From Paramoeba atlantica (Eukaryota > Protista > Discosea), in assembly GCA_977017575.1 (NCBI GenBank), contig CDRNVI010000060.1, forward strand, positions 1 through 64,000: DNA of 64,000 bases. The letters run 5' to 3'. Below are positions 5,408-64,000 of this stretch, piece after piece (within the stretch, counting starts at the first letter, position 1; each line of letters begins with the position of its first letter). The notes below the pieces were generated by a model. It was not told the origin of the DNA and ran no database searches. It was given only the letters and a program-made list of their open reading frames with translations. A program made the translations under genes and the position numbers.

Positions 5408-5434
5408 AAAAGATACAGTTTCTGTGACTTGTTG
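5408..5434 (+). ncRNA. spliced-leader exon-like sequence followed by GT
   Basis: aaaagatacagtttctgtgacttgttg|gtaatt matches the kinetoplastid SL core (gatacagtttctgt..ttg|gt). The canonical 5' aactaacgct is absent. Confidence 0.55.
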
Positions 5435-5640
5435 GTAATTTTTCCTTAGTTCATCCTTTCGTTCCCCGACTAACAGATTCGCCTGTTACCCCTACTGGTA
5501 GAGCATCAAAAACGGCCCAAATTCACCCAACAAATAGATTTTTCATGGTCTTTTCGCAATTTTTCTTTTTTAGTGGCTTCGTTAAACGCGGGTAGTTTTC
5601 AACGGGAGGCGCGCAGCATGAGTCCAAACACGGCCCTTTT

Positions 5641-58256: not shown

Positions 58257-59366
58257 GGCCGTGGCTCAAACGACGGAAAATCCTCAGCGAAAAAATATCT
58301 ACTGAACAACGGGAATGGCTTTTTTAAAAACTATAAGGACCAATTTATTAGTTTTCCATGCGTTTTTTTTCTTGGATTCAAGTAGTTGTTTGTAATATAA
58401 ATTAGTGTCGTAAAAATTCGTGTATTTTTAATTAACGTTATTTTCTCGACCAACACTGATCAAAAATATACTAATTTTTAAGAGCACTGTAGTCCACAAA
58501 GGCGGATACCAGGCTTGGCAATGTTGCATGTAGAATCTTTTGTAATTCGTGTTGCTGCACCTCTGACTTTTCCAAGTGGTCAGCGTTTTCACTGAACTGT
58601 GACTTAGCACTGTAGCTTATGAAAAAGGGTTTTTGATCGTGCGTTCTTTTTAGAGAACGAGCACAACTAGCTGACTTTTAAAAATTCTCCATCTGTTTAT
58701 TAAATCTCATTCTGTTCATTAAACTTTAATGCCATGGGACTTGTAGCATGTTCTTAGTCCTGGAGGTTGCAAGGTGTGGAAATCCTTGGATAATGACTTG
58801 AAAACACGACGGATGAAATAGGAATACTCACTTCTGAGTTATCAATATGTAAAATGCAAAAGTTGTCAATAGAAAGTATCAACAGTGTACAGCGGGTAGT
58901 GTCGACAGTGTACTGGTAATATTGATACGAGTGACAATATAAATGAAAAAAATTCTGATCAAATGGTTTAAAAAGAACATTGTTTTCAGATTATTGATAG
59001 CTAAACATTGGAGTCTGTGCAAGTCTTGGCCGTCACGAACGTCACGCGCAGCCACATTATCTTACTTTTTCGAGCTTTCTTAACATTGTTTTGGAAGGAA
59101 ACTTGATTACATGTACTCATTTCAATGTGACTGCAATCGTCTGTTCATCGGCAGCAGTGCCACGGAAATTGCAAGAGCTTGACTCCCTTCACAATCGTAC
59201 ACCTTAATCCTCTAGCCTTTCGTGTATATTGTAAAATAGTGTCCGACGCCTGACGAGCAGGACAAATGCGTTCTCTGCCTTGAAGATGGCGTTTTGCAAG
59301 GTACCGAAGTGTGCCTTTCATGTGGGCAAAGTCAGGTTATGGAATCTTTCCCTTCCGACTTGCTGC

Positions 59367-59402
59367 AAAGATACAGTTTCTGTACCTTGTTGTACCTTGT
59401 TG
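59367..59402 (+). ncRNA. spliced-leader-like fragment with a 10-nt terminal duplication
   Basis: aaagatacagtttctgtaccttgttg followed by taccttgttg. It contains gatacagtttctgtac, which I recall as the conserved SL core. Confidence 0.65.
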
Positions 59403-59429
59403 ATTTATTTCTTTATCGTTTAAATCTAC

Positions 59430-62400
59430 ATGGCGCGACACCGCGCGCAACGATCTCACTCGAATGCGCTGCAGGACCTTACACGAGGACCACGCGGCGT
59501 TCGCAAGCAAAGCGCAACTCCCACCCATCCTGACGCCTCTTCCAACGAGAACGGAAGTACTCCCGACAATCTGCTAAACGTCACGCAAACCGAGCATGTG
59601 ACTGGCAATTCGGCGAATACCACCGCATCGTCCCCAGCGGAACCCTGTAAGCACAAGTGTCTGAATAAACGTGAATGCTTACACTTGTGCTGCAAGCGTC
59701 ACTTAACTGCGCAAAGTATAACGGATAGCGACACCGTAACATCACATACCGTCATGTCAAAGAAACGAAGGAATTTTGAAGTCTCCCCGCTTGCCATGGC
59801 CCGATCAATTATACTAGTATTCAGAACTCTCTACAACATGCGGAATATTGGCATCATCATATCTAACGTCTTCAGATGGATATCTAGCCTCGCCGTTCAC
59901 CTCCTAGTAGCACCCATCCGCGCAATCCCGTCACCCAACGCCCTCAATCCTTTCCGTCGAAATGTTGGCACACAAAGTATCACGACAAAACCGTGTAGGC
60001 ACATCTGTCTGAACAAAGTCACCTGCAAACACCCTTGTTGCAAACGTCATATACGACACTCCCAGAAGAAAGTCATAAATGTGGTGCCAACAAACAATGG
60101 ACCCTTTGGTCACGTACTACTAGTCATCACAAGGAACACTCAAACCCTATTGTCCCTATTAACTGGTTGGCTTTCTGAAGCAGCAAACCCATTACACATT
60201 GTCCAATGTATGAACATGGTATATGTGTGCATAGGTAGTACCATCAGGTTCATTACTTCTTCTTGCAGAAAAACGTATGACATTTTCCCATCGCCTCTGC
60301 TTTTACTGCCCCGGATACGAATAATGCACGAGAAATTTTGTTCAAACGTCGCGCGGTTGAAAAAGCAACCACTGAGCATGACCGCTCTTGAAATCATGAA
60401 ACTTGCACAACGAATAATTCTCTGGTATATCAGGTTTTTCTATATACAAGTAGACACTATGCCACAAAATGACGGAAAACCAGAACCCGCAACCGCAAGT
60501 CCCACGAAACTATGCACATCATCCCAGCCATTCACGACTGCGGTCGAGAAAGAAAGCAATCCCTATTTACCAGCAAACCCAACAGTCACGCTTAACCACA
60601 ATGAGATGTACGAGGTGGAAAAGCTGACGGAAAAGCAAGAATTAATCATGCCTTGTCCCAGGGAACAGGAAGGAGAAAACGATGAAGTCCCTGGCTGGGT
60701 ATTTCAAAGCAGCGCGACACAGAACCGGGACGAATCCGCACCACCTGACACAAACCATGAACCACGGCAAAAGCAATACCTTCACTTTGTCCAGAGCAGA
60801 GCCCGCCCCGTGAAAGTGCGAACAGTAGCAAACCTGATCTGGACATACTTTCCAGATATTCGAAATGCCAGCGAATCTCCTCTCGTCCGGGCTAGAATAC
60901 CCTCTCTCCAAGCAGCACAAGCGGCACTCTCGAAAATGTTGTCTGGTAAAAGCAACTCTCATGACTTGGTTGTCGAGCCTTCCACAACTGAAGAACTCAT
61001 GGACCACCGCGGATGCGACTACATACATATCGAAGAACAAAATAGTCAACACATCAGTCGGCATGCCAGCTGGACATCCCTTCTCCAAGATAATACACTT
61101 AAACTCAACGAGAAGTATGCAACAGCGGGAGCACTAGGCCGCGCAGTCATGAAGGCGCTTAACGGAATGGATATACCACATCTCAGACATCTACGCATTA
61201 CAGTACATCGAAGACTGGAGGAAGCGGAAGAAGTCAGTTACGAACGTATCTCACGCAGAGAAGCATCACCGAATCGCATTCAACAGAACCGTAGTGCACC
61301 GACACTGCGCACTGTACAGCCATGCCGCCACACGTGTCGAAACAAACTTGAGTGCGCACACCTATGTTGCAAAGTATTTGGGCCACTCTATGCACCAGGG
61401 AACGAAACCGGCTGTGAATCCCCAACAACAGTACCCAGTAACATACATTCCCAAGTTGAACCCTCCACGCCGACAGTGCAATCTGACGCCTCTCAAAGTC
61501 AAAAAGCAGTAGAACTCCTGCAAAAGCACAATGCAATACTTGGCGGGAAGGTTACCATACGACTCAGCGAAGAGCAATGGCGACAGGTTGAAGCGAGAGC
61601 AAGTGCACGTTGCAACGAACTTCTAAGCGATACAACGGACAGGAAGACAGCTATACGTAACGCAGAACTTCTTAGCGCCGCCCTAGCCGTATCTGCTTAC
61701 GAAATAGCGACGGAAGCGAATCCGACAAGGGGCTTCCTCATCAGAGCTAGCACCGGACACGCCCGACGATGGTATCGACCACTCGCCACGGAGAGAGTCG
61801 CACAAGAACTGAAACACCATCTCACAACCTTGAAAACTTCGCTACGCTATACGAGAAGTAGGACGGAACGAGACGAATTACGAGCACAAATCAAAGAATG
61901 TCGGAAGCTAGTCAGGATACGTGAGGAAGAAGCGACGAAACAAAGAGAAGAAATCGATCAGCGCTGGGCCTCCGAGCGATTTTCCAGAAATCCGTGGACA
62001 GCAGCTTCAGAAACGATCGACAAACCTGACGCTAATGAAGTACAGAATACAACTTACCCGACCTGCGACCGGAACACCATAGAGACATACTTCGAGTCAA
62101 GCTTTAAACCCAGTGAAGAACTCTTCCAACTGCCTCCTCCAGATGTACTCGGACCAGGAGCCGCCCAACCCATGCATTGGGACCCAATCACGCGAGACGA
62201 TGTCACAGCAGCCATCAATATGAAACGGAACTCCAGCTCACCCGGTGCAGACACGATCACCAATCTGATTCTTAAGAAATGTCCATTCATGCATGATCAA
62301 TTTGCTAAGGTATTCAATAATCTGATGACTTTCTCGACCTGCCCTCCATCATGGAAAACTGCAATCACTAGGCTGATACATACAAGAACGGTGATACAAT

Positions 62401-64000
62401 GTAAGAACGGAGCACCGGAAAACCCCAAAAATTGGCGCCCCATTTCACTGACGAGCGCCCTTGGTAAAGCGTTCCACACAATCATATCGCATCGCCTGAC
62501 CCAACATCTTATTCGACACAATGTGATTGACCCGAAAATACAGAAAGGGTTTCTTCCCGAAATCAATGGGACATTGGAGCACACCCAAACTCTATGCACC
62601 CTCCTCCAGCACTACCAGCGACATAAACGACAGTACTGTCTTGCCCAATTGGACCTCACTAACGCCTTTGGTTCGATCCCGCATAACATTATACTAGCTT
62701 CCCTAGGTTGGGCAGGCATACCCTGCAACGTTGTCGACTACATCAAAGACAGCCTCACTGATGCACATATACGAGTTAAATGTTACGAAGGTCTAACGCG
62801 TCCCATACATGTAAAGAAGGGAGTCTTACAAGGCGATACACTCTCCACCACTATATTCTTAGTAGTCATGGAAATCGTATTACGATACGTTCGGTTCTCG
62901 TGTCCAACCTTTGGCATGCGCCTTCCCAACGGCGATAACAACTTCTTGAAAGCGTATGCCGATGATTTAACCATTCTGACCGAAAGTAACCGTGACATGC
63001 AAACTTCGCTGAACGCACTAACCACGGTGTTCTCCAAAATCGGATTAAAAATCAACGTCACAAAAAGTCGAGTCCAATGTATGAGCACGCGGAAAGGCGA
63101 AGAGCACCCGGGGTACATGACGAGAAGACCTACAGTAACCACATACGGAGAAAAAATTCCACATATTTGTGACGCCGGAAGCTCATTTCTTGGTATGACC
63201 CTCGCCCCTGGATCTCAGCAGCTAAACGAACTTTTCAAGAAATTAAACTCAAAGCTGAAGGGATGGCTCGAAAACACGAGTGCCAGCGCCTATAATCTCT
63301 CGGCTAAGCTGTGGATCTACAGACACGCTATAATTTCCCGACTTCGGTTTCAGTTTACCATCCACCCCTGCATCTCTTTCAGCTCAGTTCTGCGGCTTCA
63401 GAAGCGAGTCACAGCACACATTCGACGATGGATTAACATGGCTCGTGCCGGTAGCACAGAAGTACTATACTCCTGCCGCGGCTGGAATCTCAAAAGTCTG
63501 ACACAACTCTGGTACGAGTGCACCGGAACGTCACTTACCCAAATGCATCAATCACGAGACCCGAACGTGCTCAAGGCATTGCGCTTCCGCATCCAGGAAG
63601 AGCAAAGGAAGCGTGCGAAAGGTCAAATCCGCCTAGCTGCACAAATAACCGATCATCTTAACGACCCACAGCGCGCACGACAAATACTCCGTGATGCCCA
63701 CGAAGAACAAATGATTACACGTCTACGACAACGTGCTCCTGTTGCTGCCCTCTGGTGGCAGTTTCCGTCAGACCCAGAAATGGCACAAGAATTTGCATCT
63801 GCCATCCATGGGATCCGAAACGAGAAACTCTCGCGATTCATGTCCTCCGTCATGACTCTAACCCCCCTGCCCTCCCGAGTATCCCTTGTACAATGGGGTC
63901 GCAACTATCACTCTGATACAAACAACAAGACACGTCCTTTCATCATGCAACACATCCTTACAACAAGGGAGGTACACACTCAGACACGACATGGTTCTCC
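59430..64000 (+). CDS. single-ORF R2/NeSL-type non-LTR retrotransposon protein, at least 1523 aa, running off the window
   Basis: Translated by hand with no stop from MARHRAQ to the window end. RT motifs SPGADTI, WRPISL, QKGFLP, LDLTNAFGSIPH, GVLQGDTLS and YADD (62955-62966). Three Cys/His motifs at 59646, 59994 and 61323. Confidence 0.9.
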   Translation, partial: MARHRAQRSHSNALQDLTRGPRGVRKQSATPTHPDASSNENGSTPDNLLNVTQTEHVTGNSANTTASSPAEPCKHKCLNKRECLHLCCKRHLTAQSITDSDTVTSHTVMSKKRRNFEVSPLAMARSIILVFRTLYNMRNIGIIISNVFRWISSLAVHLLVAPIRAIPSPNALNPFRRNVGTQSITTKPCRHICLNKVTCKHPCCKRHIRHSQKKVINVVPTNNGPFGHVLLVITRNTQTLLSLLTGWLSEAANPLHIVQCMNMVYVCIGSTIRFITSSCRKTYDIFPSPLLLLPRIRIMHEKFCSNVARLKKQPLSMTALEIMKLAQRIILWYIRFFYIQVDTMPQNDGKPEPATASPTKLCTSSQPFTTAVEKESNPYLPANPTVTLNHNEMYEVEKLTEKQELIMPCPREQEGENDEVPGWVFQSSATQNRDESAPPDTNHEPRQKQYLHFVQSRARPVKVRTVANLIWTYFPDIRNASESPLVRARIPSLQAAQAALSKMLSGKSNSHDLVVEPSTTEELMDHRGCDYIHIEEQNSQHISRHASWTSLLQDNTLKLNEKYATAGALGRAVMKALNGMDIPHLRHLRITVHRRLEEAEEVSYERISRREASPNRIQQNRSAPTLRTVQPCRHTCRNKLECAHLCCKVFGPLYAPGNETGCESPTTVPSNIHSQVEPSTPTVQSDASQSQKAVELLQKHNAILGGKVTIRLSEEQWRQVEARASARCNELLSDTTDRKTAIRNAELLSAALAVSAYEIATEANPTRGFLIRASTGHARRWYRPLATERVAQELKHHLTTLKTSLRYTRSRTERDELRAQIKECRKLVRIREEEATKQREEIDQRWASERFSRNPWTAASETIDKPDANEVQNTTYPTCDRNTIETYFESSFKPSEELFQLPPPDVLGPGAAQPMHWDPITRDDVTAAINMKRNSSSPGADTITNLILKKCPFMHDQFAKVFNNLMTFSTCPPSWKTAITRLIHTRTVIQCKNGAPENPKNWRPISLTSALGKAFHTIISHRLTQHLIRHNVIDPKIQKGFLPEINGTLEHTQTLCTLLQHYQRHKRQYCLAQLDLTNAFGSIPHNIILASLGWAGIPCNVVDYIKDSLTDAHIRVKCYEGLTRPIHVKKGVLQGDTLSTTIFLVVMEIVLRYVRFSCPTFGMRLPNGDNNFLKAYADDLTILTESNRDMQTSLNALTTVFSKIGLKINVTKSRVQCMSTRKGEEHPGYMTRRPTVTTYGEKIPHICDAGSSFLGMTLAPGSQQLNELFKKLNSKLKGWLENTSASAYNLSAKLWIYRHAIISRLRFQFTIHPCISFSSVLRLQKRVTAHIRRWINMARAGSTEVLYSCRGWNLKSLTQLWYECTGTSLTQMHQSRDPNVLKALRFRIQEEQRKRAKGQIRLAAQITDHLNDPQRARQILRDAHEEQMITRLRQRAPVAALWWQFPSDPEMAQEFASAIHGIRNEKLSRFMSSVMTLTPLPSRVSLVQWGRNYHSDTNNKTRPFIMQHILTTREVHTQTRHGS

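What the first reader, a model, noticed from the sequence alone, without database searches (positions are those of the whole stretch)
59367..64000. Intact R2/NeSL-type retrotransposon headed by a spliced-leader sequence
Seen: an SL-like 26-mer plus a 10-nt repeat ends 27 nt before the ATG of an unbroken ORF of at least 1523 codons. Its RT motifs (QKGFLP..G..EH, LDLTNAFGSIPH, YADD) look R2/NeSL-like, not CRE-like. Known: SL-targeting elements in kinetoplastids are CRE-clade, while NeSL targets nematode SL1. Inference A: a second, convergent SL-targeting lineage, with the SL piece as target remnant. Inference B: the element RNA is trans-spliced and copied with its leader, giving a short ready-made 5' UTR. 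Either would be new to my knowledge.
Basis: partly seen in the sequence, partly recalled or inferred. Interest (0 to 1): 0.85.

Follow-up and report, generated by a model that had tools for sequence, protein, structure and literature searches.

The report
Retrotransposon headed by host spliced leader
A young R2-like jumping gene in a kinetoplastid-type protist starts with a DNA copy of the cell's own spliced leader because it was copied back from leader-carrying RNA, not because it aims at leader genes. This particular copy is already disabled by a small deletion.

Summary
Window 59367-59392 is an exact copy of positions 13-38 of the organism's real 38-nt spliced leader (SL), as found in 38 genuine SL RNA genes. 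It is followed by a 10-nt repeat of the SL tail, 27 nt of 5' UTR, and an ATG at 59430 that opens a stop-free frame to the window end.

"Intact" is wrong. A 29-bp deletion at 63917/63918, absent from five sibling copies, removes half of the CCHC knuckle and shifts the frame. The restriction-like endonuclease (RLE) is therefore out of frame.

The element is 5,178 bp (C60:59367-64544). It has no poly(A) tail and no target-site duplication.

- **Inference A (SL targeting) is refuted.** Three paralogous empty sites carry no SL, only a 4-nt AAAG microhomology, and the 3' flank has none.
- **Inference B (leader copied from RNA) is supported.** Four independent full-length siblings have unrelated flanks. 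Their homology ends inside the leader (positions 7, 7, 13, 16), and they carry four different leader/body joints.

How the leader is renewed each round is only partly explained.

The RT groups with unnamed RLE elements, beside a clade holding R2 and Caenorhabditis elements. No CRE reference could be obtained.

This scan has already reported the same phenomenon on other DNA of this genome. I found no paper describing it for mobile elements.

The parts
59313..59366 (.). Upstream half of the target, a dispersed repeat into which the element inserted
   Evidence: Matches C82, C34 and C30 at 90-91%. In those loci it continues directly into the sequence found 3' of the element.
59367..59392 (+). DNA copy of spliced-leader positions 13-38. 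The first 4 nt (AAAG) are shared with the target, so the templated part may start at position 17.
   Evidence: Identical to the exon of the SL RNA genes. The empty site reads tgctgcAAAGTCttcgag.
59393..59402 (+). 10-nt leader relic (SL positions 29-38 repeated)
   Evidence: The same relic occurs at 27 sites in several unrelated families.
59403..59429 (+). 27-nt T-rich 5' UTR of the element
   Evidence: Shared by siblings from TTTATTTCTTTATCG onward. The first 1-5 nt differ between copies.
59430..64000 (+). Single ORF, stop-free in the window. It ends at C60:64055 (1541 aa), and only about the first 1496 aa are authentic.
59646..59696 (+). Cys/His motif 1 (C.H.C.NK..C.H.CCK)
   Evidence: No Pfam or PDB sequence match.
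59994..60044 (+). Cys/His motif 2
61323..61373 (+). Cys/His motif 3
62421..63080 (+). Reverse transcriptase domain (aa 998-1217)
   Evidence: Pfam RVT_1, E 4.5e-28. PDB best match is R2Bm 8gh6, E 5.9e-25.
63917..63918 (+). Site of the 29-bp deletion that removes the first two cysteines of the CCHC knuckle and shifts the frame
   Evidence: Alignment of 8 copies. The same indel appears in contigs of public runs (table 4).
63886..64000 (+). Start of the out-of-frame remainder: second half of the CCHC knuckle, then the restriction-like endonuclease. It continues to C60:64467, and the element ends at C60:64544.

Best explanation
This is a recently inserted, now disabled copy of a single-ORF non-LTR retrotransposon of the restriction-like-endonuclease (R2-like) kind. 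Shown: its DNA begins with the 3' 26 nt of the host spliced leader, and the leader came in with the element. Inferred life cycle: the element is transcribed with its surroundings, as genes in kinetoplastids are, and its RNA receives the capped 38-nt leader by trans-splicing just upstream of a short T-rich 5' UTR, which makes it translatable. The protein carries three N-terminal Cys/His motifs, an RT, a CCHC knuckle and the endonuclease; it nicks a target and primes reverse transcription on the RNA 3' end (...ACAAACAA, no poly(A)). The RT runs through the 5' UTR into the leader. The cDNA end is then joined to the target at a few bases of microhomology, so each copy keeps a differently truncated leader. 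A DNA-coded leader can serve as acceptor in a later round at its internal AG, which leaves tandem leader relics. The 10-nt relic in this copy is such a trace, but its exact origin is not settled.
For: - **Real leader.** 38 SL RNA genes share one promoter region and one exon, with the classic GTATGAGAAGC intron start. They sit in 2.6-kb arrays, and 5S rRNA lies in the one SL repeat unit scanned (C3). The window 26-mer equals exon positions 13-38.
- **The leader arrived with the element.** Empty sites in C82, C34 and C30 lack it, and the junction shows AAAG microhomology with loss of 2 bp.
- **No second SL** within 10 kb around the element.
- **Sibling flanks.** Copies in C36, C66 and C54 have unrelated flanks. 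Homology stops inside the leader at positions 7, 7 and 16, against 13 here.
- **Four different joints.** The four siblings are about 99% identical. Their leader/body joints are: no relic (two different first bases), a 16-nt relic, and a 10-nt relic.
- **Relics after internal AGs.** The 16-nt and 22-nt relics start exactly after the leader's internal AGs.
- **Other families.** Families about 50% identical in protein have other UTRs but the same head, including one in a second assembly whose flank is 96% identical.
- **RNA signature.** Near-full-length DNA-coded leaders often differ from the genes at positions 1-2.
- **Scale.** At least 700 dispersed exact 23-mers of the leader, against 38 genes.
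Against: - No RNA data exist for this organism in the runs served, so neither expression nor the acceptor site was seen.
- The commonest relics (10 nt, 27 sites; 7 nt, 15 sites) do not start after an AG, yet they abut the leader exactly. Simple re-splicing does not predict this.
- Many copies of other families start at leader positions 21-25 with unrelated flanks; this is unexplained.
- None of the 8 copies of this family that were found is fully intact, so current activity is not shown.
Confidence: 0.75

Rival explanations
1. Leader capture by template switching. The element RNA itself is not trans-spliced. During reverse transcription the RT leaves the element RNA and continues on another leader-bearing RNA, or on the free SL exon whose 3' end is ...CCTTGTTG, so that a leader is appended to the cDNA.
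For: Relics are 3'-anchored leader pieces of many lengths (10, 7, 16, 8, 9, 22 nt) that abut exactly. Most do not follow an AG. Poly(A) runs lie directly in front of full-length leaders in several loci, which is a signature of end-to-end template jumps. The first base after the leader varies among siblings, as non-templated bases would.
Against: The free SL exon is a rare spliceosomal intermediate (general knowledge). The 16-nt and 22-nt relics fit the leader's two internal AGs exactly. In kinetoplastids every translated mRNA needs the leader, so an unspliced element RNA would not make the protein (general knowledge).
Confidence: 0.15
2. One-off fossil. An ancestor acquired the leader once, and it has since been inherited as ordinary element sequence, with transcripts starting upstream or at an internal promoter.
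For: Relics are inherited within some families (L015, L022 and L023 share the 10-nt relic). The non-coding 'GTAC' family nearly always starts at leader positions 11-13.
Against: Four young siblings have four different joints and different leader lengths, and none shares upstream sequence. The same 10-nt relic was gained separately in this family and in the sister family on C2, whose other members lack it.
Confidence: 0.07
3. SL-targeting element. The endonuclease aims at SL genes or at DNA-coded leader tags, and the SL piece is what remains of the target.
For: Superficial analogy with CRE/SLACS/CZAR and NeSL-1, which insert in SL genes (PMC12278014; general knowledge).
Against: Empty sites lack SL. 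No SL lies 3' of the element. The six 3' flanks are unrelated to each other and to SL genes. The array SL gene units inspected are uninterrupted, and the one large insertion examined in an SL array is an APE-type LINE in the spacer.
Confidence: 0.03

Closest known systems
Relict spliced leaders of dinoflagellate retrogenes (mRNA 'recycling'; e.g. PMC5585692, PMC12014239)
   Same: DNA copies of trans-spliced RNAs keep the leader at their 5' end. Tandem truncated leader relics record repeated rounds. Some relics start after an AG inside the leader.
   Different: Here the carriers are autonomous RLE-type retrotransposon families in a kinetoplastid-type genome, not cellular genes. Most relics (10 and 7 nt) do not start after an AG. 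The leader is the kinetoplastid type.
CRE clade (CRE1/2, SLACS, CZAR) of trypanosomatids
   Same: Same host group. Single ORF with RT, CCHC and restriction-like endonuclease, plus Cys/His motifs (PMC12278014).
   Different: CRE elements insert at one fixed position of SL RNA genes and end in poly(A). This element inserts elsewhere, ends in ...ACAAACAA, and brings the leader with it. Phylogenetic relation could not be tested.
R2 of arthropods (R2Bm, PDB 8gh6)
   Same: Best solved-structure match for the RT (E 5.9e-25). RT followed by a CCHC knuckle and a PD-(D/E)XK endonuclease. Small target deletion instead of a duplication. No poly(A).
   Different: Not in 28S rDNA. No C2H2 or Myb N-terminus detected. 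R2 frees its 5' end with a ribozyme (general knowledge), whereas this element carries the host leader.
NeSL-1 of Caenorhabditis
   Same: RLE-type LINE in an organism that trans-splices. Caenorhabditis proteins are strong profile hits (E 1e-136).
   Different: NeSL-1 targets SL1 genes and has a Ulp1-type protease (general knowledge). No protease was found here. The Caenorhabditis sequences fall in the other RLE clade of the tree.

Membership tests
RLE-type (R2-like) non-LTR retrotransposons | Reverse transcriptase of the LINE type | tested here: met
   RVT_1 E 4.5e-28. R2Bm E 5.9e-25 and L1 ORF2 about 1e-17.
RLE-type (R2-like) non-LTR retrotransposons | CCHC knuckle plus PD-(D/E)XK restriction-like endonuclease after the RT, and no APE domain | tested here: met
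   The natural sibling L052:749-3724:- has CPIC...H....C, RHD, RPD, ELTVPWE and KSEKY in one frame. These columns are conserved in alignment A1. In the window copy the module is broken.
RLE-type (R2-like) non-LTR retrotransposons | Site-specific insertion | tested here: not met
   The six 3' flanks and five 5' flanks are unrelated.
CRE clade (SLACS/CZAR/CRE) | Insertion at a fixed position of the SL RNA gene exon | tested here: not met
   Empty sites without SL, and no SL at the 3' flank.
CRE clade (SLACS/CZAR/CRE) | Poly(A) tail | tested here: not met
   All copies end ...GAACAAACAA.
CRE clade (SLACS/CZAR/CRE) | RT groups with CRE sequences in a tree | not testable with these tools
   No named trypanosomatid sequence appeared among the 120 and 70 listed hits, or among 20 looked-up clusters, of which 10 came from the top 150 of an exhaustive search.
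NeSL | Ulp1/C48 protease domain and SL1-gene target | tested here: not met
   Pfam finds only RVT_1. The target is not an SL gene.
NeSL / R2 clade | RT nested among named R2 or Caenorhabditis sequences | tested here: not met
   The own family lies in a separate clade of 24 rows (SH-aLRT 97) with unnamed sequences. This is a quick tree without bootstrap.
Retro-copies of trans-spliced RNA (dinoflagellate-type SL relicts) | DNA-coded leader at the 5' end, outside SL genes, with unrelated flanks | tested here: met
Retro-copies of trans-spliced RNA (dinoflagellate-type SL relicts) | Tandem relics truncated at the leader's internal AG | tested here: inconclusive
   12 of 77 relics (16 and 22 nt) fit. 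42 of 77 (10 and 7 nt) do not.

The most novel reading that the evidence does not exclude
Host trans-splicing is an obligatory, repeated step of this LINE's life cycle. The DNA-coded leader carries its own acceptor (the internal ACAG), so each copy can regain a full capped leader. The RT trims the resulting tandem repeats. This would be a self-renewing 5' end that replaces the internal promoter or ribozyme of other LINEs. The clustering of copy starts at leader position 23 would then mark an RT block in the mature leader, from structure or from a modified base.
Probability: 0.4. Interest if true: 0.8.

Novelty: new variant of a known kind. Interest (0 to 1): 0.7.

Why it matters
LINEs must solve two problems: how to make a translatable RNA, and how to keep a complete 5' end. 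Known answers are internal promoters, ribozymes and co-transcription with a host gene. Here a whole set of RLE-type families in a kinetoplastid-type genome appears to borrow the host's spliced leader, and its traces are written into the DNA at hundreds of sites. That gives a natural record of RNA 5' ends, of reverse-transcriptase stops and of splice-acceptor choice. It also shows that 'SL next to a retrotransposon' need not mean SL targeting, as it does for CRE and NeSL. In addition, it extends leader-tagged retroposition, so far described for dinoflagellate genes, to mobile elements of Euglenozoa.

Tried and rejected
- **RNA evidence.** No RNA run holds the stretch. The one possible RNA run (X5) laid nothing, and DNA contigs only confirmed the copies and the indel (4,901 letters were given, within the operators' limit).
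- **CRE references.** Two word-based searches, one exhaustive search, two cluster look-ups and one atlas search gave no named trypanosomatid element.
- **CRE-type insertion in SL arrays.** The 7.3-kb units on C74 hold an APE-type LINE in the spacer, not in the exon.
- **N-terminal Cys/His motifs.** No Pfam or PDB sequence match. The Mer3/HFM1 resemblance noted earlier in the scan was not tested.
- **SL exon variants with a duplicated tail.** None found; all 38 genes end the same way.
- **C45 copy as a product of trans-splicing.** It starts right after an in-ORF AG, but it is a plain 5' truncation with no leader.
- **LRR-motif target preference.** Only one of six sites of this family (C36) lies in an LRR repeat.
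- **Pattern search.** I did not pursue it.
- **Literature.** Four searches found SL relicts only in dinoflagellates, and no SL-headed kinetoplastid elements.
Full report
**What is there**

The window is G000:C60:1-64000 of a 45.7-Mb assembly. At 59367-59392 lies AAAGATACAGTTTCTGTACCTTGTTG. It is followed by TACCTTGTTG (59393-59402), then 27 nt, then ATG at 59430. From there 1523 codons run without a stop to the window end. The frame closes at C60:64055, giving 1541 aa.

Pfam sees one domain, RVT_1, at aa 998-1217. Three copies of a C.H.C.NK..C.H.CCK motif lie at aa 73, 189 and 632. They have no Pfam or PDB sequence match.

**The organism's real leader**

A pattern search found 38 sites where the leader tail is followed by GTATGAGAAGC, the usual start of a kinetoplastid SL intron. 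These sit in arrays with a period of about 2.6 kb on C97 and C107, and in shorter arrays on C3, C11 and C74.

The array copies share the same upstream region and the same exon, AACTTTAACGATAAAGATACAGTTTCTGTACCTTGTTG (38 nt). The one repeat unit scanned, on C3, also holds a 5S rRNA gene.

The window 26-mer equals exon positions 13-38.

**Limits of the element and its target**

Other copies share sequence from window 59367 to C60:64544, which makes the element 5,178 bp. It ends ...TATGAACAAACAA without a poly(A) tail.

The DNA on both sides belongs to a dispersed repeat. In C82, C34 and C30 the two sides are contiguous and read tgctgcAAAGTCttcgagagg. In the window the same place reads tgctgc|AAAG-ATACAG...ACAAACAA|ttcgagagg.

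It follows that:
- the leader piece came in with the element;
- the 5' joint used 4 nt of microhomology (AAAG);
- two bases of the target were lost;
- there is no target-site duplication.

No other leader-like sequence lies within 10 kb. This refutes inference A for this copy.

**Siblings**

- C51 is a 99.5% copy of the whole locus including its flanks. It is either a duplication or the other haplotype.
- Independent full-length copies lie on C36, C66 and C54. 5'-truncated copies lie on C45, C60 (420 kb) and C54 (522 kb).
- ORF identity among the full-length copies is about 99%. Differences are spread almost evenly over codon positions, as expected for decay after recent insertion.
- Flanks are unrelated.
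- Homology between siblings always ends inside the leader: position 7 (C36), 7 (C66), 13 (window) and 16 (C54). It never reaches shared upstream sequence. The template RNA therefore began with the leader.
- The leader/body joint differs in all four copies: no relic with ATTTC before the common UTR (C66), no relic with T (C54), a 16-nt relic with C (C36), and a 10-nt relic with A (window). The joint was therefore made several times within a young family.
- A sister family (C2, C55, C98, C101) shows the same picture: one copy has the 10-nt relic and three do not.
- A family only 50% identical in protein also starts with the leader, from position 11, before a different UTR. It comes from another assembly whose unique flank is 96% identical to this genome.

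**This copy is not intact**

Compared with five siblings, the window copy and its C51 twin lack 29 bp at 63917/63918, between two short direct repeats. Contigs of public runs show both forms (table 4).

The missing piece encodes the first two cysteines of the CCHC knuckle, and its loss shifts the frame. The second half of the knuckle and the endonuclease (RHD, RPD, ELTVPWE, KSEKY) are readable only in another frame. There the RPD motif reads RPY.

A natural 5'-truncated sibling (L052:749-3724:-) carries RT, knuckle and endonuclease in one frame. A complete ORF would be about 1,686 aa. None of the eight copies found is complete, although the search gives only a lower bound on copy number.

**Classification**

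- The best solved-structure match is silkworm R2 (E 5.9e-25), ahead of L1 ORF2.
- Word-based and profile searches return a family of unnamed proteins from related assemblies. After those come unnamed environmental RLE elements, some of them fused to C48 or UCH peptidase domains, and then named spider R2, Plectus and Caenorhabditis proteins.
- An exhaustive search adds pseudoscorpion and Artemia proteins.
- In a quick likelihood tree of the RT, rooted on APE-type LINEs, the own family falls in a clade of 24 unnamed rows (SH-aLRT 97). This clade lies beside the clade that holds the R2, Plectus and Caenorhabditis rows.
- No named CRE, SLACS or CZAR sequence was ever returned, so "not CRE-like" remains untested by phylogeny.
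- By its defining habits the element is not a CRE. It has no SL-gene target and no poly(A), which PMC12278014 lists for that clade.
- The 2016 Bodo saltans paper says that bodonids hold 'SLACS/CZAR' elements, with data not shown (PMC4728078). Whether those are elements of this kind cannot be told here.

**How the leader gets there**

The simplest reading is that the element RNA is trans-spliced like any kinetoplastid mRNA and is then copied with its leader. Two further observations point to an RNA origin:
- Near-full-length DNA-coded leaders often read AT, AG, GA or TT at positions 1-2, where all array genes read AA.
- Several are directly preceded by poly(A).

Relics give partial support for renewal at the leader's own AGs. 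Among 77 sites with a tandem leader piece:
- 10 have the 16-nt piece and 2 have the 22-nt piece, each starting right after ACAG or AAAG. The C36 sibling is one of these.
- 27 have the 10-nt piece seen in the window, 15 a 7-nt piece, 4 an 8-nt piece and 2 a 9-nt piece. None of these follows an AG, yet they abut exactly.
- About 13 have 1-8 extra bases between the pieces.

A 3-nt microhomology (TGT) could turn a 16-nt relic into the 10-nt one by RT slippage. The leader can also form a weak hairpin at positions 18-30, whose edges coincide with the relic starts (z-score -1.0, not significant). Both points are inference.

Many copies of other families start at leader positions 21-25, most often 23, next to unrelated DNA. 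I have no tested explanation for that. Template switching onto another leader-bearing RNA remains a live rival.

**Prior art**

Relict leaders in retro-copied genes are known from dinoflagellates (PMC5585692, PMC12014239). Four full-text searches found nothing on leader-headed retrotransposons in kinetoplastids, and the leader sequence itself does not occur in the library.

Within this scan the phenomenon has already been reported several times on other DNA of the same genome. My results agree with those notes. They add the following for this locus and family:
- the empty site;
- the inactivating deletion;
- the four different joints among siblings;
- the relic spectrum;
- the clustering of copy starts;
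- the uniformity of the 38 genuine SL genes.

**Limits**

- No RNA data were available.
- Listings are capped at 100 rows.
- The tree is a quick one without CRE references.

Noticed in passing
window 5410-5480: An older copy of a non-coding, leader-headed element. It has leader positions 13-38 with 2 mismatches, then GTAATTTTTCCTTAGTTCATCC... It belongs to the abundant 'GTAC' family, which nearly always starts at leader positions 11-13 and carries a CCGGNAACGGGCAT hairpin. At least 177 sites have the leader tail followed by GT (38 of them are genuine SL genes); 10 of the 12 fetched belong to this family.
   Followed up: partly
L037 1483-1520 (C3:780729-780766) and L037 2429-2547: A genuine SL RNA gene. 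The one repeat unit scanned (C3) carries a 5S rRNA gene on the opposite strand. 38 SL genes were found in total, with the main arrays on C97 and C107.
   Followed up: yes
L101, L102, L103/L107, L105/L106 (C6:27079, C83:133019, C87:74382 and 106940, C11:274164, C24:3426): Isolated copies of the whole SL RNA (exon plus intron) with foreign upstream DNA and altered first bases. They look like retro-copies of the unspliced SL RNA.
   Followed up: partly
L057 4285-8399 (C74:107284-111398): An APE-type (ingi-like) LINE sits in the spacer of an SL gene array, stretching the repeat unit from 2.7 to 7.3 kb. It is not in the exon.
   Followed up: partly
genome-wide, e.g. L059, L062-L070, C4:247622-266437: Many retro-copies of various families begin at leader positions 21-25 (mode 23, right after the internal ACAG) next to unrelated DNA. 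Starts are bimodal: near full length, or about position 23.
   Followed up: partly
L015, L019, L020, L028, L072, L075: Long poly(A) runs lie directly in front of full-length DNA-coded leaders. These may be head-to-tail or chimeric retro-copies, as template jumps would make. C1:9752-25030 is a tandem array (period 5,093 bp) in which each unit starts with a leader.
   Followed up: no
C51:68393-74893 (L046): The whole locus (element plus about 1.3 kb of flanks) is present twice at 99.5% identity, including the 29-bp deletion. This is either a segmental duplication or an uncollapsed haplotype.
   Followed up: partly
C66 and C54 copies, 5' junctions (L048, L049): Complex 5' joints. A second short leader fragment lies 25 nt upstream in C66. 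In C54, duplicated GATACAGT and ACGAGTGG blocks suggest back-and-forth template switching at integration.
   Followed up: no
L031 6239-6847, minus strand (C60:65239-65847, beyond the window): A leucine-rich-repeat protein gene (LRRNT_2, LRR) lies 0.7 kb 3' of the element. The C36 sibling sits inside an LRR repeat.
   Followed up: partly
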